Virus record (IMG/VR): IMGVR_UViG_3300026521_000471
Span: 1-64,000 of that record
DNA length: 64,000 nt
Reading direction: 5' to 3' (one strand)
Shown: piece by piece, positions 15,042-47,100 of the stretch
How the letters are laid out: the number at the start of each line of letters is the position of its first letter
Numbering within the stretch: position 1 is the first letter of the stretch
Made by a program: the position numbers and the translations under genes
Notes under the pieces: generated by a model
What the model saw: only the letters and a program-made list of their open reading frames with translations
Told to the model about the DNA's origin: nothing
Databases searched by the model: none

Positions 15042-16229
15042 TTATTTCTTTCTCAGTTTATTTTTTAATTCTTCTATTTGCTTAATTTTTTTCTCAGTAA
15101 TATCTTGTTTGATTGAAATATAACCAATCTTTACCCCATCTTTATCATAATATGGTGAAATCACATTATTTGACCAATAAGCACCACCATTTTTCTTTTT
15201 AGATTTAATTTCTCCTACCCAGTTTTTATCCGCTTCAATAGTTTCCCATAATTTCTTAAAAACATTTGCATTCATATCCGGATGTCTTATAATATTATGT
15301 GGTTCGCCTAATAATTCTGTTTTTGAATAGCCTGTTGTTTTACAAAAAGCTGATGATACATCTACAATTACTCCAAATAAATTCGTCTTGGTAAATATGA
15401 CATGTTTTTCAAAATCAGAATGCATACTAGTTAGTTGTGTATTAAGAATATCATTTTGTGTCATTAAGTCCGAAAAATCTTTGCTGTATTCATCGGCGAT
15501 TTTTTCATTTTCAAAATCAGCCCTTTCTTTTATTTTAATCATTGAATATATATAAATTATTCCAGAAATAAGCATGATCATAGAGACAATGAATAAAACA
15601 AATAACTGTAAATGTTTAATATTATCATTAATATCATTTATTGGTATCGTAGCTTCAGTAACCCCTCTAGCATCCCCTATTTTCCATTTAAAATCCCAAG
15701 TCTTTAACGGGTGGTGATTATGGCATTGGACACAAGATTTATTAGTCATATATTCGGTTTTCGCATACGTTAGATAATCTGTCCCGTCCTTTTCCGTTCT
15801 TAAAAATAGTTCCTTATGACCCTTTATATTTTTTAAGACCTTCAGCTGTAATTTTGTCAGAACTCTATCAGATTGATTTTTAAATGGAAAATTACTATAA
15901 ACAGATATACGTAAATTTGGATCGTCTATCATTGAAGCTACATCATGCATAAATGTTGCAGGATACGGTATTGTATTATTATCTTTATGTTCTGTACTAA
16001 ATTTTATACCATTAATATTATATATATCATCAACTACGTATTTGGCATAGTATTCTTTCGTTTTTAAAAGTAGATTTACTACTGATTTAGTTTTATCTTC
16101 TGCTAAATCAACTGCATATTCATGCATTTTATATGGAATAAAGACGTAAAGTGATATTAATGTAACAATATAAGATATAGTCACTCCAATTAAAAATTTA
16201 TTAGAAAACATTTGTAAAATATTTTTCAT
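15042..16229 (-). CDS. membrane sensor: periplasmic c-type heme domain (DUF3365/Tll0287-like) plus cytoplasmic PAS, no output domain
   Basis: TM helix, IPYPATF, YSNFPFKN, CVQCH (CxxCH), WKIGDARG, TM helix, PAS (HNIIRHPDM...LWETI...WVGEIKS); start at ATG 16229 after GAGGGA. Confidence 0.85.
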   Translation of the reverse strand: MKNILQMFSNKFLIGVTISYIVTLISLYVFIPYKMHEYAVDLAEDKTKSVVNLLLKTKEYYAKYVVDDIYNINGIKFSTEHKDNNTIPYPATFMHDVASMIDDPNLRISVYSNFPFKNQSDRVLTKLQLKVLKNIKGHKELFLRTEKDGTDYLTYAKTEYMTNKSCVQCHNHHPLKTWDFKWKIGDARGVTEATIPINDINDNIKHLQLFVLFIVSMIMLISGIIYIYSMIKIKERADFENEKIADEYSKDFSDLMTQNDILNTQLTSMHSDFEKHVIFTKTNLFGVIVDVSSAFCKTTGYSKTELLGEPHNIIRHPDMNANVFKKLWETIEADKNWVGEIKSKKKNGGAYWSNNVISPYYDKDGVKIGYISIKQDITEKKIKQIEELKNKLRKK

Positions 16230-16293
16230 AAGTCCCTCAGTTTGTTGATTTATCAACTTATTTATTTTCGGATTTACTTTCTTTAATTTATGA

Positions 16294-16315
16294 TTAAGGT
16301 CTAATATAATATAAT
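16294..16315 (+). promoter_or_regulatory. class I promoter TTAAG-N11-TATAAT
   Basis: Motif match upstream of 16338. Confidence 0.65.
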
Positions 16316-16337
16316 ATAAAAAATTAAAAAAGGATAT

Positions 16338-16736
16338 ATGATGCATATACGTAGTTTAGATTATTTTGATAAAGTGGGTCTGGTAACAAGCGGACTCTCT
16401 ATTTTTATTTCAAGTATTTTTTTACTTATGAGTTTTAGTTATTTAACAGAGAATTATTTAGTTATTTTAGGGTTGGTAAGTATTTCTTTAGTCCTAAATA
16501 ATTACTACCTTACCATAACTACACCAGAAATATTTAAAAAGATTAATGATGATCCCTGGAAATTTATTTTAGAACAAAGACCTATACTCGGACCTATTGC
16601 CGTTTTATTAAGTTTTTTATTAATAGGGACATTAATTAGTGGTAATCTTTTTGCATGGCAAATATATATTATATATTTTATTATGCTTATGCTTATGAAT
16701 CATACCTATTCAAAAAAATATAAACTTAGAGATTAG
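16338..16736 (+). CDS. membrane protein (about 4 TM)
   Basis: Hydrophobic segments. Confidence 0.7.
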   Translation: MMHIRSLDYFDKVGLVTSGLSIFISSIFLLMSFSYLTENYLVILGLVSISLVLNNYYLTITTPEIFKKINDDPWKFILEQRPILGPIAVLLSFLLIGTLISGNLFAWQIYIIYFIMLMLMNHTYSKKYKLRD

Positions 16737-17727: not shown

Positions 17728-18390
17728 ATGAAAAAATATCCAAGAACATTTCATTTTCAGTTTTCTCCAGAAGTACATGATGATGATAAAGTTATATCTA
17801 TGAGATATCTTGGAAATTTTCTACAAGACGAAATAGTTATCCTAGAAAAATTAGATGGTGCTAATAGTTGTCTGAAAGGTCATCAAGGTGTATTTGGAAG
17901 AAGTCATACTTTACCAACTAAAGAACCTTGGTACGACCACCTAAAAGGTTTATACTATTCTAAATTGGATAACCTGAATCCGGACTATTGGTATTTTGGA
18001 GAAAATACCTATGCTATTCATAGCATTAAATATACTAATATGGATAGTTATTTTTATCTATTCGCTATCTATGATACAGTTAATAAAATATGGCTGTCTT
18101 GGGATGATTTAGTAGAAGAAGCAAAAAGAGTTGATATACCTACTGTACCTGTATTATTTAGAGGTACAGTTATCTCAATGGCTGAAGTAAATAAATGGAT
18201 GGATAAACACATTACCGATGAATCTCAATTAGGTGGTGAATTAGAAGGTTTTGTTATGAGAGTAACAAAAGCAATCCCAGGAGATAAATTCAATGAGTTT
18301 GTAGCAAAATACGTTAGAAAAGGTCATGTGCAGACTGATGACCATTGGACAAAAAATTGGAAACCTCAAACTTTAAAGGTAAATAAATGA
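17728..18390 (+). CDS. ATP-dependent RNA ligase family protein
   Basis: KYPRTFH, motif I EKLDGAN, FGEN, FYLFAI, motif IV EGFVMR, motif V AKYVR. Confidence 0.85.
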   Translation: MKKYPRTFHFQFSPEVHDDDKVISMRYLGNFLQDEIVILEKLDGANSCLKGHQGVFGRSHTLPTKEPWYDHLKGLYYSKLDNLNPDYWYFGENTYAIHSIKYTNMDSYFYLFAIYDTVNKIWLSWDDLVEEAKRVDIPTVPVLFRGTVISMAEVNKWMDKHITDESQLGGELEGFVMRVTKAIPGDKFNEFVAKYVRKGHVQTDDHWTKNWKPQTLKVNK

Positions 18391-21814: not shown

Positions 21815-22450
21815 ATGGAAATGATAGACGTTTTAATCTATGAAATTACTAAATGTCACAAACTAATAAATTTTGATGAAGTAATCACTATTACACCTTA
21901 TGGTTCTAAAGTTTATGGTACTACTACTGAGAAATCAGATTTAGATTTTGTAGTAATTCATTCAGGAACAAACGATGAGCTTTATACCTCTGATTTGATC
22001 GATGTTCATTTCATCTCATTAAACACTTTTAAAGAGTTATTAGACAAACATGATATTATGGCTTTAGAAGTTTATTATTGGAATAAACAACATGTTCCAA
22101 AATCTAAAATTTTAGATTTAGTGGAATTTAAATTAGATAAAGTGAAACTTAGAAAATCTATTTCTGCCATTGTTAATAATTCATGGGTTAAAGCTAAAAA
22201 GAAGATGACATTACCAGAGGAAAATTCTTATATTGGTTTGAAGTCGTTATTTCATTCTTTCAGAATTTTAGATTTTGGTATCCAATTAGCAAAAAGTAAT
22301 AAGATTAATTTCTCATCTAAAAATCAATTTTGGGAAGAATTAAAAGAGTTATGGAGTGCTACTCAAGAGTGGGATAATTTCTATAAGCAATATAAACAAG
22401 AGCACAACCATTTAATGACTGAGTTCAGAAAAGTAGCACCAAAGGAATAG
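21815..22450 (+). CDS. Pol-beta superfamily nucleotidyltransferase
   Basis: YGSKVYGT...SDLDFVV motif, helical C-terminal domain KSLFHSFRIL. Confidence 0.85.
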   Translation: MEMIDVLIYEITKCHKLINFDEVITITPYGSKVYGTTTEKSDLDFVVIHSGTNDELYTSDLIDVHFISLNTFKELLDKHDIMALEVYYWNKQHVPKSKILDLVEFKLDKVKLRKSISAIVNNSWVKAKKKMTLPEENSYIGLKSLFHSFRILDFGIQLAKSNKINFSSKNQFWEELKELWSATQEWDNFYKQYKQEHNHLMTEFRKVAPKE

Positions 22451-24584: not shown

Positions 24585-24931
24585 AAGTAGCAATTATTAA
24601 ATCGACTAATGAAGCAATGCATAACTTAATAGTTGATACTCTTAATGATATAAATGATAATATTGAAATTATTGAAATAGATGAGACAAACCTAGATATT
24701 ATCGCTGATGGTGTTTTAGCTACATCAGTAAGAGATATTGAAATGTTAGATCAAATGATGACTCATAATGATTACGGTATGCTTATAACGGGGGGCAAAA
24801 TAGTCAACGGTGTAGTACCCAGTACACAGCAACACGTTTTAAAATATAGTAAAAAAATTTTATGGCGTGATAAAATACATTTTAAAAAAGTACTTAATGA
24901 AATGTATAAAGTTTTAAAAGGAAAGAGATGA
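24581..24931 (+). CDS. hypothetical protein
   Basis: ATGA overlap. Confidence 0.6.
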   Translation: MKVAIIKSTNEAMHNLIVDTLNDINDNIEIIEIDETNLDIIADGVLATSVRDIEMLDQMMTHNDYGMLITGGKIVNGVVPSTQQHVLKYSKKILWRDKIHFKKVLNEMYKVLKGKR

Positions 24932-26436
24932 AATTTACTTATCAGGGAAAACAATACACACTTATTTTATTTACTTTAGCAGGTTCAAGATTCTATGGAA
25001 CGCATTTCAATGGAAAAGGTACTGATAGAGAACATCCACTAAAACCTGATTATGTATCCGATAGTGACTATCGCGGAATCTTTGTCGCCGACGTAGATAC
25101 AAAAATCGGTTTAATGGGAACTATCGAACAAATCGAAGTTAAAAAAGGTAAAAATGGTATCGTTCCAAAAGAGCAACAAGAACTGATTAAAGAGTTAAAT
25201 GAAAAACTTGGTTTAGATATGCCGATGGATGAGGATATTACTCTTTATGAAACAAGAAAATTTGTAAGTATGGCTATTGAGAATAACCCAAACATCCTTG
25301 ATTTACTTTTTGCTGATGATGAAGCTATCATTTATTCTAATAAAAGAGGTAGAAAACTTCTTAAAAATAAAGATATTTTTCTAAGTAAAAAAACAAAACA
25401 TACTTTTTCAGGCTATGCAGCGAGCCAGTTAGGACGTATCCGTGGACATTACAAAATGCTTACAAAATACCCAAAAGTAAATACTGTAATTAGACAATTA
25501 AAACAAGCTTTTGAAGATAAAGTTATTGATTTTAATTGGATTACAGATCACTTCGGTGGTAACGTTTCACAATTCGTAACGGGCATGACACAAGAAGAAG
25601 CTTCAGAATTAGGTAAAATTCCATCAATTTCTTGGGAAGATTTTATCAAAGATAGAGAAGCAGATTTCTCAACTTTCTCTGATGGTGCAAAGTATATGGA
25701 TTATTCTGATGAAGAATATGAAGAAATGAAGAACTCTGTCATGTTTAAGGGTGAGTGGAATCTTTATAGAAAACCTCAAGCAATCGATTACTGTACTGCT
25801 AAAGATTTGAAAGCTCATAAACTTGATATGAATGATGGTGTATGGAGTTTAGATGGGGAAAGAGTAGTTACAAAGGAAGATGGTGAAATTATGACTATTA
25901 GAGAATTTCTTTTAACTGAAGCATCTTTTAGAACTATCTCTAAAACTCAATTTAATATCTTTACACCACCTGAAGGAAAATACAACGGTGGTATCTTTGC
26001 TAGAAATGGTAAACTTCGTTCAAATGATCCTAAAGAAGTTGGTGAATTTGTATTCCAACTTAGTTTCAATGAAAATGAATTTAAAAAACAAACGGATGCT
26101 ATAGCAAAACTTTGGGAGTGGCGTGTTAAAAGAAATGAAAAAAGAAGTATTTTAGAGGAAGCTTTCGGTTATGATACTAAACACGCAGCACATCTTGTAA
26201 GATTACTATTAGGTGCTAAAAATATCCTTGAAAAAGGTACTTATGAACCTCGGTTGAAAGGTAAAAACCTTAAATTAGTTAGAGATGTTTTAGCGGGAAA
26301 ATACACTTATAATGAAGTGGTAAAAATGGGAGAAGAATTAGAGAAAGAATTAGAACCTCTCTATGAAGCTTCTACTTTACCATTTAGTGCTGATAAAGTA
26401 AAAGCAAATGAGCTGCTACTAAAGCTTAGTAAGTGA
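24928..26436 (+). CDS. YcgL/RlaP-like nucleotidyltransferase with a large internal insertion
   Basis: AGSRFYG...SDSDYRGIF, NNPNILDLLF, TFSGYAASQL, GYDTKHAAHLVRLL. Confidence 0.85.
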   Translation: MKFTYQGKQYTLILFTLAGSRFYGTHFNGKGTDREHPLKPDYVSDSDYRGIFVADVDTKIGLMGTIEQIEVKKGKNGIVPKEQQELIKELNEKLGLDMPMDEDITLYETRKFVSMAIENNPNILDLLFADDEAIIYSNKRGRKLLKNKDIFLSKKTKHTFSGYAASQLGRIRGHYKMLTKYPKVNTVIRQLKQAFEDKVIDFNWITDHFGGNVSQFVTGMTQEEASELGKIPSISWEDFIKDREADFSTFSDGAKYMDYSDEEYEEMKNSVMFKGEWNLYRKPQAIDYCTAKDLKAHKLDMNDGVWSLDGERVVTKEDGEIMTIREFLLTEASFRTISKTQFNIFTPPEGKYNGGIFARNGKLRSNDPKEVGEFVFQLSFNENEFKKQTDAIAKLWEWRVKRNEKRSILEEAFGYDTKHAAHLVRLLLGAKNILEKGTYEPRLKGKNLKLVRDVLAGKYTYNEVVKMGEELEKELEPLYEASTLPFSADKVKANELLLKLSK

Positions 26437-26841: not shown

Positions 26842-28137
26842 GTGGAAAATATTGATATAGGTATTATTGATGTAGAATCTTTAAAAACCTTAAATAAAAT
26901 TTTAGAATCAAAAAAAGAATATATTATAAATTATTGGCTAGATGATGAAAAACTCAAGCCAATTTTTGAGATGTTGGAAATAGAAAAAGAAACATTTAAA
27001 AGCAAATACGCATATCATATTTTTCATCATTTTCAATCCATTGATTATGATAATATGTATTTTAAAACATATATCGATGAAATGGAAGACAAACAGCATT
27101 TAATAAAATATTTTTACCGATTAATCGCTCATCTAAAGAATAAGATTATATTATTTTTAATACAGTATAACATAGATAACAATGATAAAATATTTATGGA
27201 TGATTCACTGCTATATACGATTGATAATGCTATATCTGAATTATTAGATTCTATAACAAAACATCTTCAAAGAGATTATACTGCAAATACAAAAAAATTA
27301 AAGATATTAGAAAATGCTGCATTAGTTACTAGAACTGATAAAGACGGTAGCATATTATTTATGAGCCCACCATTATTAGAGTTACTAGGATATTCAGAAG
27401 AGGAAATGCTTGGAGCAGGTTTTAATAAAATCAGACATCCCAGAGTTTCTTCTAAATTTTATGAAAAACTATGGAGGACATTAAAATCTGGTAAACCTTT
27501 CAAAGGGACTATTAAAAATTTAACTAAGAATAGAAAAGAAGTAATATTTCATACACAAATTGTTCCTGATTTTAATTTTGATGGAGAAATAGTTGGTTAT
27601 ACAGCTATAAAAACAGATTTAACCGATAAAACAAGAGCAAGAACTGACACATTAACAGGTCTTTTAAATCGTTCAGCATTTAATGATCGATTATCTGAAC
27701 TTATAGATAGATATAACAATTTTCATATTCCAGTTTCTTTAATAATGATTGATATTGATTATTTTAGTGAAGTAAATAATAACTACGGTCATATTACTGG
27801 TGATAAAACTCTAAAACATTTTGTTAAACTAATTAAAGAGATAATTAGACCTACTGATACATTTGCAAGATGGGGAGGGGAAGAATTTATTATAATTCAA
27901 AATAATACATTAGATAATTCTATTAAAACTGCTGAAAGAATAAGAAAACATATAGCAGAAAGCACGTTCCCAGAAGTAGGACAAAAAACATGTAGTCTAG
28001 GTGTGGCAGAATTTAATAATAGTTATGCAGATATAGATTCATTTATAAATGAACTTGATAAAGCATTATATTATTCAAAAGAACATGGACGTAATAAGGT
28101 CTCATACGTAGTTAAAAATGGTATAGAATCTGTTTAA
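26842..28137 (+). CDS. PAS-GGDEF diguanylate cyclase
   Basis: PAS (FNKIRHP...LWRTL), DTLTGLLNR, DIDYFSEVNNNYGHITGD, I-site RPTD, active site RWGGEEF. Confidence 0.93.
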   Translation: MENIDIGIIDVESLKTLNKILESKKEYIINYWLDDEKLKPIFEMLEIEKETFKSKYAYHIFHHFQSIDYDNMYFKTYIDEMEDKQHLIKYFYRLIAHLKNKIILFLIQYNIDNNDKIFMDDSLLYTIDNAISELLDSITKHLQRDYTANTKKLKILENAALVTRTDKDGSILFMSPPLLELLGYSEEEMLGAGFNKIRHPRVSSKFYEKLWRTLKSGKPFKGTIKNLTKNRKEVIFHTQIVPDFNFDGEIVGYTAIKTDLTDKTRARTDTLTGLLNRSAFNDRLSELIDRYNNFHIPVSLIMIDIDYFSEVNNNYGHITGDKTLKHFVKLIKEIIRPTDTFARWGGEEFIIIQNNTLDNSIKTAERIRKHIAESTFPEVGQKTCSLGVAEFNNSYADIDSFINELDKALYYSKEHGRNKVSYVVKNGIESV

Positions 28138-32305: not shown

Positions 32306-33604
32306 ATGGCAAAAAAAACATACACAGTTATTGAACGTAATGGACATAAATATAATCTTTTAGCACTACCAGATACAAATTTTTTTAAGTTTGAAATAAT
32401 TAATTTGTGGGGTTCTAATATCGAACGTTTGTATGAAACAAAGTTTGGTAAAAATGTTTATGGTATCTCTCACTTTATAGAACACTTAGGTTTTAGAAAC
32501 CCCAAAGATTTCAGTACAGCAGAACTTTTAAACCATTTGAAAAACGACGGTACTTATAATGCTTCAACAGATTATGACCGCATCAATTATTGGTTTCAAA
32601 CTACAATGGATAGAGTTGATTTAGCTATAAAATTAGTTGCAAACTATGCTTTAAATACATTAGATAATATCCCATCAGATGAATTTGAAATCGAAAAGAA
32701 AGTAGTGTATAATGAAGCGAAACGTTATGCTGATGATGACCAAACGATGTTTTGGTTTAATAGTACTAGAGCACTAACAGGTTATAAAGAAGAAGATAAT
32801 ATTATAGGTATTCCTGAAACAATTGACACTTTTGAAATTGATGATTGTATAAGAATTAAAGATTTATTTTTAAGTAATGCACAAAATATTTTTAATGTTA
32901 CTTACGATCCAAGTATTCTAACTGCCAATGAAGTAATCGATAAGATAGAGCTTGAACTACATAGACATAAACCATTAGGTATTATGGATAAAATTTCTGA
33001 AGAAGAATATAAAGGAGTTGTAATTCAACCTAAACATATCAAAACTACGTTGAGTAATGAGAGTGAACAACATATAACTTATCTAAATTTTGATATTGTT
33101 GAAAATATAGAGGTTGCAAGAGCCGGAAATCAATATTTAGCAAGATATGCCGAAGGAACTTCTTTAGATGATGTAATTAGAGAGCAGAACGGTCTAACTT
33201 ATGGAATTACGTTAGGTGCAGCAAACATTTCGTATAAACCATATACTTATTTTGGGTGTGATGTTTCAAAAGGCGATGAGGAACTACTACTTAAATTATT
33301 TAAAGAAAGTATTAATGCTTCAGTTGATGCTTGGAATGAGAAAACACATAAAAAATTTATGGACGCTAAAAAATTGAAAAGAGTTATGAATTTATTAGAC
33401 CAAAAAAATTATGGTGGTTGGCATAATAATGGGACATGGTATCCAGAGATTATTGAAGAAATGAAAGAAGTATTAGCAACAGATTTAGATAATGCATATG
33501 AAGTCGCAGATGAAAAATATGCTACTGTTGAAAGAGTAAGAGATTATTTAGAAAAATTTAGAAAAGCAGTCAATGAAGATGATTTTGCATTAGTAACAAA
33601 TTGA
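32306..33604 (+). CDS. M16 (insulinase) family zinc peptidase
   Basis: GISHFIEHL (HxxEH), NASTDYD, EKKVVYNE, IREQNGLTY. Confidence 0.9.
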   Translation: MAKKTYTVIERNGHKYNLLALPDTNFFKFEIINLWGSNIERLYETKFGKNVYGISHFIEHLGFRNPKDFSTAELLNHLKNDGTYNASTDYDRINYWFQTTMDRVDLAIKLVANYALNTLDNIPSDEFEIEKKVVYNEAKRYADDDQTMFWFNSTRALTGYKEEDNIIGIPETIDTFEIDDCIRIKDLFLSNAQNIFNVTYDPSILTANEVIDKIELELHRHKPLGIMDKISEEEYKGVVIQPKHIKTTLSNESEQHITYLNFDIVENIEVARAGNQYLARYAEGTSLDDVIREQNGLTYGITLGAANISYKPYTYFGCDVSKGDEELLLKLFKESINASVDAWNEKTHKKFMDAKKLKRVMNLLDQKNYGGWHNNGTWYPEIIEEMKEVLATDLDNAYEVADEKYATVERVRDYLEKFRKAVNEDDFALVTN

Positions 33605-36813: not shown

Positions 36814-38268
36814 ATGAATGAAAATGATGTTAAAGAAGAAATTAAAGAAGCTTGGAAAGATTTAAAAAACGGTACAAAAGTTAAAGCTAAGCTTACTGAA
36901 AAAATGGATGAGAAGCTCGACGGTTTAGTAGCAGCAGCAAAAGCTGGAAATTGGAAAACTCAGCTGGAAGAAGCAATAGTACAGATGATTACTTATAATT
37001 ATTCAAGTAATGAAAGTTTAATGTGGTATGGACATTTAGTAACTCAATGTGAAATAAAAAGAGATTTAACTATGCCAAGTCCTGCTGGGGTAAGATTTAT
37101 GTTTAATAAATACGAGATGTTTATTAATCCTTTACTTTTTGGTTTATATTCAACCGATGAACAAATTGCTATATTGAAACATGAAATGTTACATATTATC
37201 AATTTGCACATTGTAAGACAAAAAGATAGAGACCATAAAAAATGGAATTATGGTACTGATTTATCTATCAACCAATTAATCCCAAACATTCCTGAAGATG
37301 GATTACAACCTGAAAAATTTGATTTTGCAAAAAACCTTAATGCAGAACAGTATTATGATATGATACCTACAAACTATGAGAGTGAAGAACCTCAAGAAGG
37401 TAATGAAGACGGTGAGGGTGGTGGAAGTTGTTCTGCACAAGGTTCCGGAGATGGAGAGCCACAAGATGGTGATGGTTCTGGAAACGGTGATGGTTCTGAT
37501 GTAATTGATGATGAGAAAAAACTTAAAGATCTAATCTCCCAAGCATTAAATGCAGCTCAAGAAGGAATGATTGGTGATCATGGTAAGTGGCAAAATTCTG
37601 AAGGTGATGAACAGGCCGCAAAAGAAATTACAAGACAGATGTGTGAAACAGCTACTAATAAATCCAGAGGTATGACACCAGGTGAAGTAGAAGGAGCAAT
37701 CCAATTACTTAAAATGCAGGAGCAAATTAACTGGAAGAAAGAGCTGAGAAGAATTGTTGGTAATAGAAAAGCATTTTCTAAACTTACAATTAAGAAAAAT
37801 GATAGAAGATTTCCAGGTCGTAAGGATTTAAGAGGTAAAACAAAAGATCATACAAAAGATATTGTAGTTATCTTAGATGTATCGGGTTCTATGAGTGATG
37901 AGGAAGTTCTCTATGGTTTAAATGAAATTAAGGCTATTGCAGAAAAAGCTAGAGCTGGGGTTACTATTATTCAAGTTGATACAGAGCCAAAAATTGTAGA
38001 AGATTTTGATCCAAAAGCAAAAACTTTTAATCGTAGAGGTTATGGTGGTACTTATATGACTCCTGGAATTGAAATGATTAAGGAACAGAAATTAAAATGT
38101 GACTGTATTTTGTGTATAACTGATGGTTACATTGAATCAACTTTTGATATTGATTTACCAAGAGTACCATTTATTTTCTTAGTTACACAAGATGCAGATA
38201 ATTTATCTATTGATGTAGGTTCATATCCGAGAATGAAAAAACATACATTGAAAATTGGTGATAAGTAG
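36814..38268 (+). CDS. DUF2201-type HExxH metallopeptidase plus VWA domain protein
   Basis: LKHEMLHI, WNYGTDLSIN, G/D-rich linker, MIDAS DVSGS, GYGGT, TDGY. Confidence 0.9.
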   Translation: MNENDVKEEIKEAWKDLKNGTKVKAKLTEKMDEKLDGLVAAAKAGNWKTQLEEAIVQMITYNYSSNESLMWYGHLVTQCEIKRDLTMPSPAGVRFMFNKYEMFINPLLFGLYSTDEQIAILKHEMLHIINLHIVRQKDRDHKKWNYGTDLSINQLIPNIPEDGLQPEKFDFAKNLNAEQYYDMIPTNYESEEPQEGNEDGEGGGSCSAQGSGDGEPQDGDGSGNGDGSDVIDDEKKLKDLISQALNAAQEGMIGDHGKWQNSEGDEQAAKEITRQMCETATNKSRGMTPGEVEGAIQLLKMQEQINWKKELRRIVGNRKAFSKLTIKKNDRRFPGRKDLRGKTKDHTKDIVVILDVSGSMSDEEVLYGLNEIKAIAEKARAGVTIIQVDTEPKIVEDFDPKAKTFNRRGYGGTYMTPGIEMIKEQKLKCDCILCITDGYIESTFDIDLPRVPFIFLVTQDADNLSIDVGSYPRMKKHTLKIGDK

Positions 38269-39106: not shown

Positions 39107-39469
39107 TTGTTGATGTATTTCTCATATCAAGCACATACTTTAGATGGAAAATCTCTTAAAATTTATTTACCATTACCAACTAAAAAATCACAATATGAAG
39201 ATAGACTGAAATTTTATAAACAAATAGATGATAGAAAATTATATGTCGTGAAAGATACTAAAGATATTATTAGAGAATGTCATATACATAATACTTTAAA
39301 AGAATCAATAAATTATATAAGAAAAGATCTAATATATTCGATTGAATGGATAAGTGATGATAAAAATGCACCTCCTGGTAATCCTGATGTTTATGTGGCT
39401 AAATGTAGAGATGCTTTAACTGAATTAGAAAATAAATATATCAATAAATTCCCGGAGATATTCTTATGA
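39107..39469 (+). CDS. small protein with PE-tail (FPEIFL)
   Basis: Terminal motif. Confidence 0.7.
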   Translation: MLMYFSYQAHTLDGKSLKIYLPLPTKKSQYEDRLKFYKQIDDRKLYVVKDTKDIIRECHIHNTLKESINYIRKDLIYSIEWISDDKNAPPGNPDVYVAKCRDALTELENKYINKFPEIFL

Positions 39470-39654
39470 TTGTAGATGTAGATAAAAAGGCAATCCAACA
39501 ACAAATAAAGTTTTTAGTTAAAATAATAAACCAATATCAAAAAAGATTAGAAACTGAACCTCAATTTTTAACTAGAGAAGTTGAAGAAAATTTAGAAAGA
39601 GCTAAAGCAAAATATGATTATATTATTAAAGAATATCCAGACTTAATCATCTAG
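39466..39654 (+). CDS. small protein with PE-tail (YPDLII)
   Basis: Terminal motif; ATGA overlap. Confidence 0.7.
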   Translation: MIVDVDKKAIQQQIKFLVKIINQYQKRLETEPQFLTREVEENLERAKAKYDYIIKEYPDLII

Positions 39655-41301
39655 ACTATTTTTTAAATCTAATATATTACCGAATGATTTTTTATGAGTT
39701 ATTTGAGCAAAAATATTTTTCATATCATTACCTGAAAGATGACCTCGTTCTGCTTCTCTCATTAAATTTTTTGTTATTTTAAACTCGCCATTATATTTAA
39801 ATAATTCAAATGCTAAATTTATAATATGACCTTGTATTTGTAACGTATTAGAAGCACTAGCATATCCAAATTCTCTGGCTACTGCAATAATTTTTTTCAT
39901 GTTTTGTGGCATATTCCAAATACTAAAAAGCTTCTCAACAGCGTGTAAATTATTAAATCCTAATAGATTCATTTCTAAACTAGTTATAGATTTTGACGAT
40001 TTTTGTAAATTTTTAAAACGATCTACTCTCTCATTAATAATTAAAGCCTGATTTGTCAGGAGCATACCTAGTGGTAATATATGCATAACAGCAGTTAAAT
40101 CATCTTTATCATCTTGGGGTATATCTATAAATTTAATCCATTCTGAAACAAATTTAACTCGGTATTTTGAAACTTCAATTAACTCTTCTAATGAAATATC
40201 ATATGCGTCTAAATATAAACTGTCAAATGTTTCGTTAGCTACCTCTGTTATTGCTAATGCCCCTATTTGTTTTTTACCTAGTAATGATACAGCAATAGAG
40301 ATTTTTGATACTCGATTTGGTAGGCCTATATACGGGGAATTAATTTCCCGTAAAATAATTGCTGAGAACATTGGATCTTGTTCAACAACTTTTACTATTT
40401 GGTTGATATTTGAATTGCTATCAAAACACAATTCTTTTAACTTAGTTAATGTACTAGGTAAAGGTTCAATTGCTTCAGCTAGTTCAACTAATGTAATCTG
40501 CCCTTTATTAATAGGTATTTCAATCTCCGTATTACTACGTTCATATTTTTTAACAATCATAGTCTTAAAATCAGCCATTTTCATATTATGTGTATTATAA
40601 ACATTTTCGATTGCTAATTTTTCTTTAACTAAGTTTAAAGAACTTTCTTTACTGAATTTACTCAAAACATATAAATTTTCAAAATCGAATTCAATATCAT
40701 TTAAACAAACTATGAGATCTATGATATGCCCATCGGGGTATTTTAAATCAGTTATTAAAATTTTTTTACCGGGCATTTTTATAAGGTCAATTGCCTCGGA
40801 TTTAGTAGAAACACTATCCACAAATTTAAATTTTGTACTAAGAATTTCTGTTAATAATTTTGATACTTTTGGATCTCGATTAAGGATCACAATATCATAA
40901 TATTCATTAAGTTTTGGGGAAGTGTAATTTTTACATTGAACGATTGGCGCAGTATCAAATTCAATAGCATAAAATTCTGGATCTTCATGTTGTTGAATTT
41001 GAGTTACCCACCTTTCAATTTGAATAGAAAAGTTTTCAAACCAATTAATCACATCTTGATTAAAAGCACAAGTATAATTTTTTATAAAAAACAAAATATC
41101 TTCTGTTTTTTCAAGGAGAATAGAAATTTCTTCAAATTTATGATAGTAAGTAATAGCTTTTAATGAATGTATCGACCTAAATAATGTGTCGATCAATTTT
41201 GATGAATTAATTTCATCATTTCTAAAATCAATAATAGTGTTATTAATAATTATAGACAAATTATCTAATCTTATAATATAATCTTCAAGTTCTTCAGTCA
41301 T
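39643..41301 (-). CDS. Hpt + receiver-like + HDOD signalling protein
   Basis: CheA-P1-like LFRSIHSLKA; REC-like ILITDLKYPDG; HDOD PLPSTL...VEQDPMFSAIILREINSP...AVSLLG...WNMP. Confidence 0.85.
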   Translation of the reverse strand: MTEELEDYIIRLDNLSIIINNTIIDFRNDEINSSKLIDTLFRSIHSLKAITYYHKFEEISILLEKTEDILFFIKNYTCAFNQDVINWFENFSIQIERWVTQIQQHEDPEFYAIEFDTAPIVQCKNYTSPKLNEYYDIVILNRDPKVSKLLTEILSTKFKFVDSVSTKSEAIDLIKMPGKKILITDLKYPDGHIIDLIVCLNDIEFDFENLYVLSKFSKESSLNLVKEKLAIENVYNTHNMKMADFKTMIVKKYERSNTEIEIPINKGQITLVELAEAIEPLPSTLTKLKELCFDSNSNINQIVKVVEQDPMFSAIILREINSPYIGLPNRVSKISIAVSLLGKKQIGALAITEVANETFDSLYLDAYDISLEELIEVSKYRVKFVSEWIKFIDIPQDDKDDLTAVMHILPLGMLLTNQALIINERVDRFKNLQKSSKSITSLEMNLLGFNNLHAVEKLFSIWNMPQNMKKIIAVAREFGYASASNTLQIQGHIINLAFELFKYNGEFKITKNLMREAERGHLSGNDMKNIFAQITHKKSFGNILDLKNSLDD

Positions 41302-42073: not shown

Positions 42074-42109
42074 ATAATATACCAAAAAAATTAAATTTAA
42101 GGATGAAAT

Positions 42110-43682
42110 ATGGCAAAAGAGAAATTTGTTAGGGGTGAAAAACCTCATGTTAATGTGGGAACAGTAGGGCATAGACTATGTGCCATCTCTTGGTAACAAG
42201 GGATTAAAAAGAGTTTAAATTGTCTGGAAACCCCTAAAGCTTCTTTTACTAAAACAGAGCCAGAAATGGCATATGGTATAGTTAATGAAAATTAGAAAGA
42301 AAAAAGAAGATGGAATATGTGGAAACGCTAAGTTCTTTATAATGGGCAATCAGCAGCCAAGTTACCTAACTCAAATATATTGAGATTTCTATGTGAATAG
42401 AATTTAAGGTAGAAGGTTCAGAGACTGTAATAACTCAGTCCGTTAATCTTAATTGAATTTCGGATTATGGTACAGTCCAGACTACAACAACTTTACTTAG
42501 TTAGTTGGCTTATGAAAGTAAGTGTAGTAATTGGTAGATCATGGCAAGACTACTTTAACTGCAGCAATTACAGCAGTAATGGCAGTTAAAAACGGTGCAG
42601 CATTTATGGATTACGATCAAATCGATAATGCACCAGAAGAAAGAGAAAGAGGTATCACTATTGCTACTTCTCATGTTGAATATGAAACTGATAAAAGACA
42701 TTATGCTCATGTTGATTGTCCAGGTCACGCAGATTATGTTAAAAATATGATTACTGGTGCTGCACAAATGGATGGTGCTATTCTTGTTATTGCTGCTACT
42801 GATGGACCTATGGCTCAAACGAGAGAACATATCCTTCTTTCAAAACAAGTTGGTGTACCAGCAATTGTTGTTTTTATGAACAAAGAGGACCAACTTGATG
42901 ATGAAGATAAAGATGAAATGGCTGAACTTGTAGAAATGGAGATTAGAGAACTTCTTGACCAATACGGTTTTGATGGTGATAACACTCCTGTTATTCTTGG
43001 TAGTGCATTTCAAGCTCTTGAAGAAGCAAAAACCGGTACTTTAGGTGAGTGGTCAGAAAAGATTGTACAACTTATGGATTCAGTAGATGAGTGGATTCCA
43101 GAACCAGTTAGAGATACTGATAAGGATTTCTTAATGCCTATTGAAGATGTATTCTCAATTGCAGGTAGAGGTACAGTTGTTACTGGTAAAATTGAGAGAG
43201 GTACAATCAAACTTGGTGAAACAGTAGAAATTGTAGGTATTAAAGACACTCAAACATCAACTGTTACAGGAATTGAGATGTTCCGTAAAGAGATGGAAGA
43301 AGGTTTAGCTGGGGATAATGCAGGTATTCTTCTAAGAGGAATTTCAAAAGATGATGTTGAAAGAGGTCAAGTTCTTTGTAAACCTGGTTCAATAACACCA
43401 CATACAAAGTTCAAAGCGGAAGTTTATGTTCTAAGTAAAGATGAGGGTGGTCGTCATACTCCATTCTTTAATAATTATAGACCTCAGTTCTATTTCTATA
43501 CATCTGATATTACTGGTGCAATTACACTAGAAGAAGGTGTTGAAATGGCTATGCCTGGTGATAATGTGACTATTACGGTAGAACTTATTGCTCCAATGGC
43601 TATCGAAAAAGGAACAACTTTTGCTATTAGAGAAGGTGGTAGAACTGTCGGCTCTGGTATGATTGGAGAAATTATCGAGTAA
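42110..43682 (+). CDS. tuf: elongation factor Tu, two exons: join(42110..42172,42534..43682), 403 aa
   Basis: Exon 1 [21 protein letters not shown] plus exon 2 VDHGKTT; [30 protein letters not shown]. Confidence 0.97.
42173..42533 (+). ncRNA. group I intron (361 nt, no ORF) in the tuf P-loop
   Basis: P1 GGCAU/GUGCC with U.G at the splice site; P10 CUAU/GUAG; GGGCAATCAGCAGCCAAG; GTTCAGAGACTG and ACAGTCC (P7); terminal G; removal restores GHVDHGKT. Confidence 0.95.
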
Positions 43683-43704
43683 ATCTCCTCTCGATAATTT
43701 TTTT
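43668..43704 (+). terminator. intrinsic terminator after tuf
   Basis: AAATTATCGAG...CTCGATAATTT followed by a T-run. Confidence 0.55.
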
Positions 43705-43738: not shown

Positions 43739-44713
43739 ATGATAGATTATACAAGATGGAACACATTTCTACCAGTAGATTTGGGCTATGGAGATGTTAA
43801 AATCGCCCTTAAAAAAGAAGATGGTACTTTAATGATTGCTAAGTATCCGTCAGCAGTAGCTAAAGTCAATCCAAAGAGATTTGGTGCCGGCGAAGCAGTT
43901 GAATTTGAAGGCGATTATTACTTAATTGGCGAGAATGCTATAAACTACAAACCCGTAGAAATGAATGATTATGAAACATTAGAAAAGTACGCACCATTAC
44001 TTATTTTTCATGCATTTAGAAAATATGGAGAATTCAATACTATTGTAACAGGACTTTCAATTAGACAAGAGGATAATTCTCAATCATTTAAAGATAGGCT
44101 TTCTAGTTTTGAAATTGATGGTCAAGAATATAATATGGATGTAAAATTACTACCCCAAGGTATTGGAGCTAAAATTGTAGTACAAAAACAATTTAATGAA
44201 ATCCAAAACTATTTAGTTTGTGATGGTGGCTTTAATACTGTTGATTTAGTTCCTGTATTTGATGGAAAAGCAGATTTACACTCTGTTGATGCTTTAGAAA
44301 ATAGAGGCATTATTGAGGTTGTAAATGAATTAATTGAATATATTGCAGGTGAGTATAATATAGAACTATCACCAAAAGAAGCTAAGTATGCCTTAGATAA
44401 TCAACGCATTGATATTTATGGAAAAGAAATTGATTTAACAGATATTATTGCACATATTACAACAGATTATTCTAAAGACTTAGTAAGACAAATAGAAAGA
44501 AAGTTTAAAAAATCATGGCATAAATTCCAAAAAGTTATTATTGTTGGTGGGTTATCTCATTTTGTAGATGCTTCTGTTTATGAACATTTAGCAACTGTAC
44601 CTAAAGGTGAATACTTTAATGCTGTTGGGTTCCACCAATACGCTGATGAAAAATTAGGGGATACGACACCTCAAAAACCAAAGGTTACTAGAAGACGAGT
44701 GAGTAAACTCTAA
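43739..44713 (+). CDS. ParM/StbA-family actin-like ATPase
   Basis: VDLGYGDVK (phosphate 1), TGLS, LPQGIG, CDGGFNTVD (phosphate 2), IVGG, NAVGF. Confidence 0.88.
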   Translation: MIDYTRWNTFLPVDLGYGDVKIALKKEDGTLMIAKYPSAVAKVNPKRFGAGEAVEFEGDYYLIGENAINYKPVEMNDYETLEKYAPLLIFHAFRKYGEFNTIVTGLSIRQEDNSQSFKDRLSSFEIDGQEYNMDVKLLPQGIGAKIVVQKQFNEIQNYLVCDGGFNTVDLVPVFDGKADLHSVDALENRGIIEVVNELIEYIAGEYNIELSPKEAKYALDNQRIDIYGKEIDLTDIIAHITTDYSKDLVRQIERKFKKSWHKFQKVIIVGGLSHFVDASVYEHLATVPKGEYFNAVGFHQYADEKLGDTTPQKPKVTRRRVSKL

Positions 44714-45712: not shown

Positions 45713-47100
45713 ACACCTCGCTGAGAAAACCCAATGGCTAAAGACCATTGGGATGAATCAGCAATTATTTGACATTTTACATTAATTTATTGTAAAATAA
45801 GTATATAGATATAGAGTTTAAGGAGGATTGAGTTGAAATTTCATCGTAATTACAAATTCAGATTACAACCAAATACTGAACAATCCGATTTCCTTAATCA
45901 TTATTTCTTTACTGCAAATCAAGCCTGGAACTTTGCTTTGAATTTAAAAATCAAAGACCTTTCTGTCAATTCTTCTCTGCCGAAGGCAGATAGGAAATAC
46001 TTAAAGTTCAAAGATATTTATTCTCTTACAAAAGAACACCTTAAAGAACGAGGAATTAAATACAATTCAGGTGTAATTCAAGATGAACTAAGAAAATTAG
46101 ATGATACGTTTTCTCGATTCCATAAGAAAATTGGTGGATTTCCTAAATTCAAGTCCTCAAAGAAAATCGAACAATCAATCATCATCAGGAATCAAGCAAC
46201 TTATTGGGATGAAATGGAATTGGAGATCTTCAGAAAGAAAATCAGAACTAAATTCCATCGAGAAATTCCTTTGGAATCTAAATTTACTGGTGGTATTGTA
46301 AAAAGAGAGTCAGATGGAAACTATTATTTTATTGCTAATTTGATCATTAATGATAAAAATCAATATCCAAAAACAGGAACAGAATGTGCTCTTGATTTGA
46401 ATGTAGAAAATATAGCTATTTCAGATTCAAATGGAAATCGAAGATTGATTAAATTGGAGGATTTTTCAAAAAGTAAATATTCAAAGAACTTTTTAAAGTT
46501 ACAAAGAAAACTTTCAAAAAGATACAAAGAAAAGAACTTTTCTAAAAATACCAAACGATTACAAAAGAAATCAAATCGAATGTACAAGAAAATCAAAAAC
46601 AAAAAAGAGGATTTTTTTCACAAGCTCAGTAATGAGCTGACTAATCAATATGATAGAATCACAATAGAAGATCTGGAAATCAAAAAGATGAAAGAATCGA
46701 AATCAAATCGACTCAATCGTCTGATTTCAGATGTAAGTTGGGGTTCGTTGATACAAAAAATCAAATATAAACAAGAACAAAAGAACAAATTGATTAGAGA
46801 ATTAAATCCAGCTTTTAGCAGTCAGAGATGCTTCAAATGTGGTCATATCAGTAAGAACAATAGAAAAACGCAAAGCGTTTTTAATTGTGAAAACTGTGGA
46901 TACACTACTCATGCAGACCTGAATGCTTCAGATAATCTCTTAGATTATGATAATTGGTCTCTGGAACAGATGACCTTGATCCAGCAATGGAATCAGAATC
47001 TTTGTATCGAGAATGTCAGTTAATTCTGAAATTCGATGATTGGAGTGCCTCTCGGCACTCCCTTAGAAGCCCAATCGTCTTTAGCGGTTGGGTAGTTCAC
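45713..47100 (+). mobile_element. IS200/IS605-family non-autonomous (tnpB-only, IS1341-like) element, 1388 bp
   Basis: TTTAT target at 45708-45712; left hairpin CCCAATGG/CCATTGGG 45730-45752; right hairpin 47070-47092 then TTCAC; no target duplication; no tnpA. Confidence 0.9.
45833..47023 (+). CDS. tnpB: TnpB RNA-guided endonuclease
   Basis: YKFRLQP HTH, GFPKFKS, RuvC D (ALDLN), E (IEDL), Zn finger CFKC/CENC, D (ADLNAS). Confidence 0.95.
   Translation: MKFHRNYKFRLQPNTEQSDFLNHYFFTANQAWNFALNLKIKDLSVNSSLPKADRKYLKFKDIYSLTKEHLKERGIKYNSGVIQDELRKLDDTFSRFHKKIGGFPKFKSSKKIEQSIIIRNQATYWDEMELEIFRKKIRTKFHREIPLESKFTGGIVKRESDGNYYFIANLIINDKNQYPKTGTECALDLNVENIAISDSNGNRRLIKLEDFSKSKYSKNFLKLQRKLSKRYKEKNFSKNTKRLQKKSNRMYKKIKNKKEDFFHKLSNELTNQYDRITIEDLEIKKMKESKSNRLNRLISDVSWGSLIQKIKYKQEQKNKLIRELNPAFSSQRCFKCGHISKNNRKTQSVFNCENCGYTTHADLNASDNLLDYDNWSLEQMTLIQQWNQNLCIENVS

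What the first reader, a model, noticed from the sequence alone, without database searches (positions are those of the whole stretch)
42110..43682. Phage-encoded EF-Tu split by a group I intron inside the GTP-binding P-loop
Seen: the ORF track starts EF-Tu at VDHGKT. The missing 21 residues are at 42110-42172, separated by a 361-nt intron with canonical P1 U.G, P10, P4/P7 signatures and terminal G. Established: phage group I introns mostly sit in nucleotide-metabolism, DNA-metabolism, terminase or lysin genes, and splicing needs an exogenous guanosine. I do not know of one in tuf. Inference: production of a GTPase would depend on a guanosine-dependent ribozyme, a possible link to guanine nucleotide status. 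The C-terminal [10 protein letters not shown] also departs from the conserved FYFRTTDVTG.
Basis: partly seen in the sequence, partly recalled or inferred. Interest (0 to 1): 0.85.

Follow-up and report, generated by a model that had tools for sequence, protein, structure and literature searches.

The report
Group I intron in phage EF-Tu
A probable giant-phage copy of the translation factor EF-Tu is split, exactly inside its GTP-binding loop, by a genuine 361-base self-splicing group I intron that a close relative of the phage lacks; it is a new home for a familiar kind of selfish RNA element, not a new mechanism.

Summary
A relative about 88% identical in DNA (L001) has an uninterrupted 403-aa EF-Tu with exactly the predicted junction. 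A 496-kb relative (L002) has a diverged copy (83% identical) of the intron at the same site. The intron belongs to a family of at least 30 copies in the same metagenomes, including one more in this window. Across 25 copies, 96% of pair cells are paired, 41 of 63 pairs show compensatory changes, and no shuffle matches this. Rfam RF00028 gives 27 bits for this copy, below threshold, but 56 bits for a homologue. The exons are under strong purifying selection (101 synonymous against 1 non-synonymous difference). The intron carries no endonuclease gene. The contig is an IMG/VR viral contig with jumbo-phage-like genes, but I found no structural gene in the window. EF-Tu genes and abundant group I introns are both already reported in huge phages; the tuf site appears new. 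The proposed link to guanine-nucleotide status has no support, because the intron is dispensable. [10 protein letters not shown] is shared by the whole clade and is unrelated to the intron.

The parts
42099..42103 (+). Shine-Dalgarno-like AAGGA, 6 nt upstream of the tuf start codon
   Evidence: Read directly. The same AAGGA precedes the start codon in L001, L002 and L004.
42110..42172 (+). tuf exon 1: 21 codons, [21 protein letters not shown], ending in the first two residues (GH) of the P-loop GHVDHGKT
   Evidence: It is identical to residues 1-21 of the intron-less P0003.
42173..42533 (+). Group I intron, 361 nt, with no ORF and a terminal G at 42533. An in-frame stop (TAA, 42194-42196) lies in loop L2.
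   Evidence: RF00028 hit 42180-42497. Precise absence from L001. Homologous copy at the same site in L002. Covariation across the family. The longest internal ORFs are 32-44 aa.
42168..42184 (+). P1: exon GGCAU (42168-42172) paired with the internal guide GUGCC (42180-42184), with a U.G wobble at the 5' splice site. The same loop holds CUAU (42176-42179), which pairs with exon-2 GUAG (42534-42537) to form P10.
   Evidence: Read directly. In L002 the guide reads UUAU/GUGCC and still pairs.
42185..42204 (+). P2 hairpin (8 bp) with a GUAA tetraloop
   Evidence: 6 of its 8 pairs are formed in 23-25 of 25 copies (the outermost in 17), with many compensatory changes.
42211..42215 (+). P3 5' strand GAGUU, paired with AACUC at 42432-42436
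   Evidence: Two of the five pairs covary (UA/AU/CG and GC/AU/UA) with no broken pair.
42221..42355 (+). P4-P5 domain: P4 42221-42227/42350-42355; P5 42232-42234/42344-42346; extension P5a 42240-42247/42302-42309; P5b 42259-42262/42267-42270; and two small hairpins
   Evidence: P4 is invariant. P5a and P5b are rich in compensatory changes.
42363..42411 (+). P6 (42363-42366/42408-42411) with an extended loop
   Evidence: UA/CG and CG/AU covariation.
42423..42477 (+). P7 (42423-42429/42471-42477, crossing P3 to form the pseudoknot) enclosing the P3 3' strand and P8 (42437-42443/42460-42466)
   Evidence: all 7 P7 pairs are formed in 25 of 25 copies, with one G-C to A-U compensatory switch. P8.
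42509..42522 (+). P9 hairpin with a GAAA tetraloop
   Evidence: A U-A to C-G compensatory change between the window and L002.
42534..43682 (+). tuf exon 2: VDHGKT... to the stop codon, 382 codons, covering EF-Tu domains 1-3
   Evidence: Pfam GTP_EFTU (E=6.8e-56), D2 and D3. 99.7% identical to P0003 residues 22-403.
43670..43704 (+). Terminator-like hairpin overlapping the stop codon: AATTATCGAG / CTCGATAATT followed by TTTTT
   Evidence: Read directly. The consensus scan did not call it because the stem has few G-C pairs.

Best explanation
A mobile, ORF-less group I intron has inserted in phase 0 between the His and Val codons of the P-loop (GH|VDHGKT) of a functional EF-Tu gene. That gene belongs to a roughly 224-kb AT-rich element, most probably a huge phage of Arcobacteraceae-like Campylobacterota. 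The tuf gene was captured from that host lineage. The intron comes from a family that circulates among huge phages of the same community and also sits in terminase-like, helicase-like and other genes, including a second gene in this window. After transcription the RNA folds into the standard P1-P10 architecture. An external guanosine attacks after the U of GGCAU. The terminal G (42533) then defines the 3' splice site, and ligation restores GGGCAU|GUAGAU and hence GHVDHGKT. Unspliced RNA can give only a 28-residue peptide, because of the stop at 42194-42196. The intron is a presence/absence polymorphism with no evident benefit to the phage. Its location reflects the general preference of homing elements for invariant functional motifs. 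It probably spreads between co-infecting phages by recombination, started by an endonuclease supplied in trans (an HNH-NUMOD3 gene lies next to tuf in the 496-kb relative) or by ordinary recombination. Shown: the boundaries, the fold, the polymorphism, selection on the exons and family membership. Inferred: actual splicing, the route of mobility and the host.
For: Boundaries: the intron-less allele L001/P0003 reads ...GTVGH|VDHGKT..., and the two genomes are collinear at 86-93% identity on both sides of a clean 361-nt gap. Fold: RF00028 aligns over its full length, E=6.7e-5, and homologues score up to 56.1 bits against a gathering score of 50. On a MAFFT alignment of 25 copies, RNAalifold recovers P2, P3, P4, P5, P5a, P5b, P6, P8 and P9, with 40 of 60 pairs showing compensatory changes. 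With P7 added, 96% of cells are paired and 41 of 63 pairs are compensatory, against 33-42% paired when the partners are slid; 0 of 500 shuffles reach the observed values. The single-sequence fold has z=-2.5. Function of the host gene: 101 synonymous against 1 non-synonymous codon difference versus L001, and 136 against 27 versus the other intron-bearing allele L002, with exon 1 intact in both. All three EF-Tu domains are present and the protein aligns end to end with solved EF-Tu structures. Not an artefact: the same intron appears in an independent assembly (L046, identical) and in a 496-kb relative (L002, 82.7% identical, 348 nt). Mobility: the intron is present in the window and L002 but absent from L001, which is the closer relative of the window. 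The two intron-bearing alleles share the 24 nt around the junction exactly, and show no synonymous difference in codons 13-23 (P about 0.01), whereas intron-less alleles differ there at 3-7 positions. Family: at least 30 related copies, many in tandem within one gene, next to intein-bearing terminase-like and DnaB-like genes. Origin of tuf: the nearest named cellular EF-Tu sequences are from Arcobacteraceae, at 81-82% identity, and sit in the usual tuf-rpmG-secE-nusG context, which this copy lacks.
Against: There is no RNA evidence of splicing. This copy scores below the Rfam gathering threshold (27.1 against 50 bits) and is missed in whole-window scans. No homing endonuclease gene lies in or next to the intron in this genome, and the L002 HNH protein has no homologue in the window, so the route of mobility is unproven. 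The identical exon flanks could reflect P1/P10 pairing constraints rather than co-conversion. No virion structural gene or terminase was found in the window, and two searches with a terminase fragment did not reach this contig. The element also carries many cell-like signalling genes, so 'phage' is not independently proven.
Confidence: 0.82

Rival explanations
1. Regulatory gate: splicing responds to guanosine nucleotides or translation status, so that phage EF-Tu is made only when the GTP pool or the ribosome state is right.
For: Splicing is needed to make a P-loop-complete EF-Tu. Group I splicing uses a guanosine cofactor (established knowledge). The 5' splice site is only 63 nt from the start codon, and an in-frame stop lies in L2, so translation and folding could interact.
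Against: The intron is dispensable: L001 encodes the same protein without it, as do L004, L006 and most clade members. Members of the same family sit in unrelated genes, so nothing about it is specific to tuf. From general knowledge, not tested here: group I introns are saturated by guanosine nucleotides at concentrations far below cellular GTP.
Confidence: 0.04
2. Dead intron, dead gene: the insertion inactivated tuf and the exons are a decaying pseudogene. Alternatively, a truncated protein is made from TTG 42531.
For: No splicing data exist. The Rfam score is sub-threshold. The ORF caller starts the gene at 42531.
Against: Exon 1, its Shine-Dalgarno sequence and exon 2 are intact in two intron-bearing lineages that differ by 16% in DNA, and substitutions are overwhelmingly synonymous. 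Every core helix of the ribozyme is intact and covaries. No Shine-Dalgarno sequence precedes TTG 42531, and a product starting there would lack the GH of the P-loop.
Confidence: 0.05
3. Weapon or immunity module: an endonuclease acting in trans (such as the HNH-NUMOD3 protein encoded beside tuf in L002) cuts intron-less tuf alleles of competing co-infecting phages. The intron marks and protects the carrier's own allele.
For: An HNH plus NUMOD3 gene lies 209 nt upstream of tuf exon 1 in L002. Relatives of its C-terminal region lie on two other contigs that carry this intron family. The intron-bearing alleles share identical flanks, as co-conversion would produce. A precedent exists for intron endonucleases in competition between jumbo phages (recalled from the literature, not checked here).
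Against: No such gene exists in the window. The L002 endonuclease's target is unknown. The tuf of a candidate host lineage differs at 9 of 30 positions around the site and has C, not U, at position -1, so nothing suggests host tuf is attacked.
Confidence: 0.1
4. The element is not a phage but a megaplasmid or another extrachromosomal element. The finding would then be a group I intron in a plasmid-borne accessory tuf.
For: No capsid, portal, tail or terminase gene was found in the 64 kb. The window holds many cell-like genes: GGDEF-PAS, HDOD, DnaJ and an Alp7A-like segregation actin here, and a chemoreceptor and an MFS transporter in relatives. The terminase-fragment searches did not hit the contig.
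Against: The contig is an IMG/VR viral genome, UViG_3300026521_000471. A gp32-like SSB matches only jumbo phages. There are several PHROG-only families, an RNA ligase and nucleotidyltransferases. Genes are compact and co-oriented at 28% GC, with no rRNA or tRNA. The intron family is otherwise found in terminase-like and helicase-like genes.
Confidence: 0.1

Closest known systems
Self-splicing group I introns of phages (T4 td, nrdB and sunY; SPO1 DNA polymerase; Twort orf142; Staphylococcus phage K lysin and polymerase), recalled from established literature
   Same: A P1-P10 ribozyme interrupts an essential, highly conserved coding motif. There is a U.G pair at the 5' splice site, a terminal G and an early in-frame stop. 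Presence varies among close relatives.
   Different: The host gene is a translation elongation factor, not a DNA- or nucleotide-metabolism gene, a terminase or a lysin. The intron holds no endonuclease ORF. There are no P7.1/P7.2 helices between P7 and P3' (only 2 nt), so it is not a typical IA2 phage intron. I did not assign a subgroup.
Group I introns of huge 'Jug' gut phages (PMC12880540)
   Same: Huge phages carry many group I introns and inteins that split essential genes such as terL, nrdD and DNA polymerase, mostly with stand-alone homing endonucleases. The family found here likewise sits in intein-bearing terminase-like genes, often several per gene.
   Different: Those introns average about 206 nt and come from phages of Bacteroides-like gut hosts. 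The paper's main text does not mention elongation factors. The intron here is 361 nt, has a long P5 extension, and sits in tuf.
EF-Tu genes of huge phages (Al-Shayeb et al. 2020, PMC7162821)
   Same: Huge phages encode elongation factors G, Tu and Ts. IMG/VR holds further large contigs (146-533 kb) with uninterrupted tuf genes.
   Different: Those other tuf genes are only 54-60% identical to this one, which suggests separate acquisitions, and none is interrupted (contiguous matches of about 1.16-1.19 kb). nhmmer found none of this intron family in their loci.
Cellular EF-Tu of Arcobacteraceae (for example Malaciobacter mytili, P0042)
   Same: 81-82% identical protein with the same three domains and G motifs, including the NKED variant of the G4 motif.
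   Different: The cellular gene sits in tuf-rpmG-secE-nusG-rplK and is uninterrupted. The phage clade has an extra residue near the N-terminus and [10 protein letters not shown] in place of FYVRTTDVTG.
Intron homing driven by a free-standing endonuclease ('collaborative homing' in T7-like phages; intron HNH endonuclease in nucleus-forming jumbo phages), recalled and not checked here
   Same: An ORF-less intron plus, in L002, a separate HNH-NUMOD3 endonuclease gene directly beside the interrupted gene.
   Different: The window genome has no such neighbour. Neither cleavage nor target has been tested.

Membership tests
Group I catalytic intron (Rfam RF00028) | Covariance-model match at or above the curated gathering score | tested here: inconclusive
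   This copy scores 27.1 bits against a gathering score of 50, with E=6.7e-5 on 601 nt and the full model length aligned; it is not reported in whole-window scans. Clear homologues (nhmmer E values 1e-23 to 1e-56) score 37.9, 48.8 and 56.1 bits, so the family passes through its best member. The threshold is an annotation criterion, not a structural definition.
Group I catalytic intron (Rfam RF00028) | Conserved core of paired regions P3-P8, including the P3/P7 pseudoknot, supported by covariation | tested here: met
   The RNAalifold consensus on 25 copies, with P7 added by hand, gives 63 pairs: 96% of cells paired, 41 pairs with compensatory changes, 33-42% paired in slid controls, and 0 of 500 shuffles reaching the observed values.
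Group I catalytic intron (Rfam RF00028) | P1 formed by the 5' exon end and an internal guide sequence, with a U.G wobble at the cleavage site | tested here: met
   GGCAU (42168-42172) pairs with GUGCC (42180-42184). The His codon is CAT in both intron-bearing alleles and CAC in the intron-less L001 and L004.
Group I catalytic intron (Rfam RF00028) | Terminal guanosine at the 3' end and P10 pairing with the 3' exon | tested here: met
   G at 42533 (and at the last base of the L002 copy). CUAU (42176-42179) pairs with GUAG (42534-42537).
Group I catalytic intron (Rfam RF00028) | Removing it restores an uninterrupted reading frame identical to intron-less homologues | tested here: met
   Exon 1 joined to exon 2 equals P0003 (403 aa) except for one residue. 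The DNA gap relative to L001 is exactly the 361 nt. This is a DNA-level inference, not RNA evidence.
Group I catalytic intron (Rfam RF00028) | Guanosine-initiated self-splicing activity | not testable with these tools
   This needs in-vitro transcription and splicing, or RNA-seq.
Mobile group I intron carrying its own homing endonuclease | An endonuclease ORF (LAGLIDADG, GIY-YIG, HNH, His-Cys box or similar) inside the intron | tested here: not met
   No ORF longer than 44 aa overlaps 42173-42533 on either strand. The intron is ORF-less. An HNH-NUMOD3 gene lies outside the intron, and only in L002.
Translation elongation factor Tu | Domain architecture GTP_EFTU + D2 + D3, with G motifs intact after splicing | tested here: met
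   Pfam E values are 6.8e-56, 1e-21 and 3e-37. GHVDHGKT (restored by splicing), DCPGH, NKED and SAF are visible. The protein aligns end to end with solved EF-Tu structures, E=4e-195.
Translation elongation factor Tu | Delivery of aminoacyl-tRNA to the ribosome | not testable with these tools
   Only strong purifying selection argues for function.
Tailed (huge) phage genome | Virion hallmark genes (major capsid, portal, terminase, tail) | tested here: inconclusive
   None was found among about 50 ORFs of the 64-kb window scanned with Pfam or PHROGs, and terminase-fragment searches did not reach this contig. Supporting a phage: IMG/VR lists the contig as viral, and the SSB, RNA ligase and several PHROG-only families match phages. 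The other 160 kb could not be read.

The most novel reading that the evidence does not exclude
The intron is not merely selfish. Because it lies 63 nt into the message and needs a guanosine cofactor, its splicing is rate-limiting and tuned to guanine-nucleotide or ribosome status, so that the phage's own EF-Tu is produced only at a particular stage or physiological state of infection. That would be a ribozyme-gated translation factor.
Probability: 0.04. Interest if true: 0.8.

Novelty: new member of a known kind. Interest (0 to 1): 0.45.

Why it matters
This appears to be the first documented self-splicing intron in an EF-Tu gene. It sits in one of the most conserved coding motifs in biology. 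It shows that a gene captured by a huge phage from its host becomes a target for the phage community's own intron family: the guide sequence is fitted to the tuf P-loop, while the ribozyme core is shared with copies in terminase-like and helicase-like genes. Natural alleles with and without the intron, plus a diverged second copy at the same site, form a ready-made system for studying how introns move to new sites and co-convert their flanks in uncultured huge phages. There is also a practical point. Gene callers truncate the gene at VDHGKT, and Rfam at default thresholds misses both introns in this window, so such interruptions are probably under-counted in phage metagenomes. It does not reveal a new mechanism.

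Tried and rejected
1. Rfam at gathering threshold and an E-value scan of the whole window found no intron. Only a local scan did.

2. An exact search for the P7 pattern in IMG/VR returned only the window's own contig.

3. The genome-contig scan with the core pattern returned one weak, unrelated Nomurabacteria hit, so there is no sign of this family in reference cellular genomes.

4. Two attempts to show a terminase on the same contig, one with a fragment and one with a two-sequence alignment, found other huge-phage contigs but not this one. This is inconclusive.

5. PHROGs and Pfam scans of about 50 window ORFs found no structural gene.

6. Looking for a homing endonuclease near the intron in the window found none. 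The 185-aa upstream gene is also present in the intron-less L001 (96% identical) and has no family hit.

7. The idea that the target is shared with host tuf was rejected for Malaciobacter, whose sequence differs at 9 of 30 positions.

8. Literature searches for the NCBI assembly and for phage EF-Tu introns gave nothing usable.

9. My first motif-based placement of P3 and P5b was wrong. I replaced it with the RNAalifold pairs.

10. I did not assign an intron subgroup, because no subgroup models were available.
Full report
**What is in the sequence**

The window is the first 64 kb of JGI contig Ga0256828_1000004 (224,467 bp), which is also IMGVR_UViG_3300026521_000471; locus coordinates returned by several tools coincide with window coordinates.

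At 42110-42172 a 21-codon ORF reads [21 protein letters not shown]. It is preceded by AAGGA six bases upstream. The annotated EF-Tu ORF begins at TTG 42531, so VDHGKT starts at 42534 and the gene runs to the stop at 43680-43682. Pfam finds all three EF-Tu domains in exon 2.

The 361 nt between the exons (42173-42533) end in G. The insertion is in phase 0 between His21 and Val22 of the G1 motif GHVDHGKT. An in-frame TAA at 42194-42196 would stop any ribosome that reads into the unspliced intron.

**Is it a group I intron?**

- Rfam reports nothing at gathering threshold, nor in an E-value scan of the whole window.
- A local scan aligns RF00028 over its entire length to 42180-42497: 27.1 bits, E=6.7e-5, against a gathering score of 50.
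- By eye, P1 is exon GGCAU paired with guide GUGCC, with U.G at the splice site. P10 is CUAU paired with exon-2 GUAG. P7 is GACUGUA paired with UACAGUC.

The decisive evidence is comparative:

- A core-pattern scan of metagenome contigs, followed by nhmmer, found at least 30 related copies. One is a second copy in this window at about 11197-11530.
- Members of this family score 37.9, 48.8 and 56.1 bits against RF00028, so the family passes Rfam's own threshold through its best member.
- On a plain MAFFT alignment of 25 copies (A3), RNAalifold recovers P2, P3, P4, P5, a P5 extension, P6, P8 and P9. 40 of 60 pairs show compensatory changes.
- After I added the P7 pseudoknot strand, which is formed in 25 of 25 copies with one G-C to A-U switch, 96% of cells are paired and 41 of 63 pairs are compensatory. 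Only 33-42% are paired when the partners are slid by 1-3 columns, and 0 of 500 column shuffles reach the observed values.
- The single-sequence fold has z=-2.5.
- Only two bases separate P7 from P3', so there are no P7.1/P7.2 helices. L2 is GUAA and L9 is GAAA. I did not assign a subgroup.

**Are the boundaries right?**

A protein search with exon 2 found a tight clade of EF-Tu sequences, 88-100% identical, on contigs of 54-496 kb.

- P0003, on a 221,509-bp contig from another sample (L001), is 403 aa, uninterrupted, and reads ...GTVGHVDHGKT....
- L001 is collinear with the window at 86-93% DNA identity. The alignment breaks at exactly 42171/42534 in the window against 10062/10064 in L001. The only other breaks are two TnpB insertion-sequence polymorphisms.
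- An independent ENA assembly (L046) carries an identical intron.
- A 496-kb NCBI contig (L002) carries a 348-nt copy, 82.7% identical, at the same codon boundary, with visible compensatory changes in P5b, P6 and P9.

The interruption is therefore neither an assembly artefact nor a chimera.

**Is the gene alive?**

- Against L001 the spliced coding sequence has 107 nucleotide differences: 101 synonymous codons and 1 non-synonymous.
- Against the other intron-bearing allele (L002) there are 136 synonymous and 27 non-synonymous codon differences, and exon 1 is intact in both.
- The protein aligns end to end with solved EF-Tu structures, E=4e-195.
- No Shine-Dalgarno sequence precedes TTG 42531, and a product starting there would lack part of the P-loop.

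Full-length EF-Tu therefore requires splicing, and selection on both exons implies that splicing happens. This is an inference; I have no RNA data.

**Mobility**

The intron has no ORF longer than 44 aa. In this genome its neighbours are an HDOD protein, a 185-aa protein that is also present (96% identical) in the intron-less L001, and an Alp7A-like actin.

In L002 an HNH plus NUMOD3 endonuclease gene lies 209 nt upstream of tuf exon 1 on the other strand. Relatives of its C-terminal region lie on two other contigs that carry this intron family, but not in the window.

The tuf distances are 8.8% between the window and L001, 16% from either to L002, and 19% to L004 and L006. The intron pattern across these five is +, -, +, -, -. 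At least two gain or loss events are therefore needed.

The two intron-bearing alleles share GTGGGAACAGTAGGGCAT|GTAGAT exactly and have no synonymous difference in codons 13-23 (P about 0.01). The closer but intron-less L001 differs at three of those codons, including CAC instead of CAT at the splice site. This fits homing with co-conversion, although constraint from P1/P10 pairing explains part of it.

**Context**

Family members elsewhere flank intein-bearing terminase-like exons, a DnaB-like helicase and other genes, and several often sit in one gene: four on L057 and three on L063. This is the classical target spectrum, and it shows that the tuf copy is an offshoot of a phage intron family.

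The nearest named cellular EF-Tu sequences come from Arcobacteraceae at 81-82% identity. In Malaciobacter the gene lies in tuf-rpmG-secE-nusG-rplK, and its DNA differs at 9 of 30 positions around the insertion site.

Other large IMG/VR contigs carry unrelated (54-60% identical), uninterrupted tuf genes.

**Phage or not?**

In favour of a phage:

- IMG/VR classifies the contig as viral.
- A gp32-like SSB matches only jumbo phages such as 121Q, PBECO4 and Phosso.
- The window holds an RNA ligase, nucleotidyltransferases and several PHROG-only families.
- Genes are compact and co-oriented at 28% GC, with no tRNA, rRNA or other Rfam family.

Against, or unresolved:

- No structural gene lies in the 64 kb.
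- Cell-like genes are common: GGDEF-PAS, HDOD, PAS sensors and DnaJ.
- Two terminase-based searches did not reach the contig.

I rate 'huge phage' at about 0.9.

**Comparison with what is known**

Huge phages are known to encode EF-Tu (PMC7162821). They are also known to be riddled with group I introns and inteins in terL, nrdD and polymerase genes, with splicing confirmed by metatranscriptomes (PMC12880540).

Full-text searches found no group I intron reported in tuf, tufA or EF-Tu. Organellar tufA introns in the listed papers are group II.

The element is thus an ordinary group I intron at a new site, in a new class of host gene.

The structural reading is right. The proposed coupling to guanine-nucleotide status is not supported:

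- The cofactor requirement is common to all group I introns.
- The intron is absent from a sister genome that makes the same protein.
- Members of the same family sit in unrelated genes.

[10 protein letters not shown] is conserved in every clade member listed, with or without the intron. It is a lineage trait of this phage EF-Tu and is unrelated to the intron.

**Verdict**

This is a real, well-supported and neatly polymorphic group I intron in the P-loop of a (probable) huge-phage tuf gene. It is a new member of a known kind, of moderate interest.

Noticed in passing
window 11082-11530 (+), with the downstream ORF 11479-12120: A second group I intron of the same family (nhmmer 80.9 bits against the tuf intron; RF00028 37.9 bits on a local scan) follows a short 5' exon (11082-11196, MTKEELLKRRKEIK...), with P1 CCAU/GUGG. 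The downstream 213-aa ORF has only weak PHROG 'DNA polymerase' hits and no Pfam hit. Rfam at default settings misses this intron. A near-identical arrangement exists on L059.
   Followed up: partly
L048-L069 (metagenome contigs), e.g. L057 1-1488, L063 4495-5296, L065 4283-5186, L060 145-824: A family of at least 30 related introns. Often 2-4 lie in tandem within one gene, separated by exons as short as about 10-40 nt. They sit in genes that also carry inteins (...YYTNGILSHN|T, ...FYCNGILTHN|S): terminase-large-subunit-like exons and a DnaB-like helicase (L069).
   Followed up: partly
window 45714-47100; L001 5250-7043: TnpB/IS605-type insertions are polymorphic between close relatives. The window's copy (ORF 45833-47023, with OrfB_IS605 and Cas12f1-like TNB domains) is absent from L001 and L046. 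L001 has a different copy that is absent from the window at 39132/39135.
   Followed up: partly
window 43739-44713; L001 11271-12245; L002 11454-12434: An actin-like gene (ALP_N, MreB-like_C and Alp7A_like_C domains) lies immediately downstream of tuf in the window, in L001 and in the much larger L002, but not in L004 or L006. A paper read here (PMC4877394) cites an EF-Tu-MreB interaction in Bacillus subtilis, so the conserved tuf-alp pairing may be functional.
   Followed up: no
L002 8818-9519 (-): A free-standing HNH plus NUMOD3 endonuclease gene lies 209 nt upstream of the intron-containing tuf in the 496-kb relative. Its C-terminal region has relatives on the intron-bearing contigs L053 and L051, and none in the window.
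   Followed up: partly
window 1162-1980, 15042-16346 (-), 26842-28137, 39643-41301 (-), 32306-33604, 36814-38268: There are many cell-like regulatory and chaperone genes for a viral contig: DnaJ, a PAS/Tll0287-like sensor, a PAS-GGDEF diguanylate cyclase, an HDOD protein, an M16 peptidase, and a DUF2201 metallopeptidase/VWA protein. Relatives L004 and L006 add a chemoreceptor, an MFS transporter, a CNNM/CBS protein and HD-domain proteins.
   Followed up: no
window 43450-43510 (EF-Tu residues [15 protein letters not shown]): A clade-wide substitution in EF-Tu domain 3 replaces the otherwise near-invariant Arg with Tyr (FYFRTTDVTG becomes [10 protein letters not shown]). GAGV also becomes GSGM near the C-terminus. 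Both changes are present in all eleven 90-100% relatives that I checked. Their functional meaning is unknown.
   Followed up: partly
window 17728-18390, 21815-22450, 24928-26436: An RNA ligase and two nucleotidyltransferase-like genes (RlaP, an RNA-repair pol-beta family) cluster here. This suggests an RNA or tRNA repair module alongside the phage's own EF-Tu.
   Followed up: no
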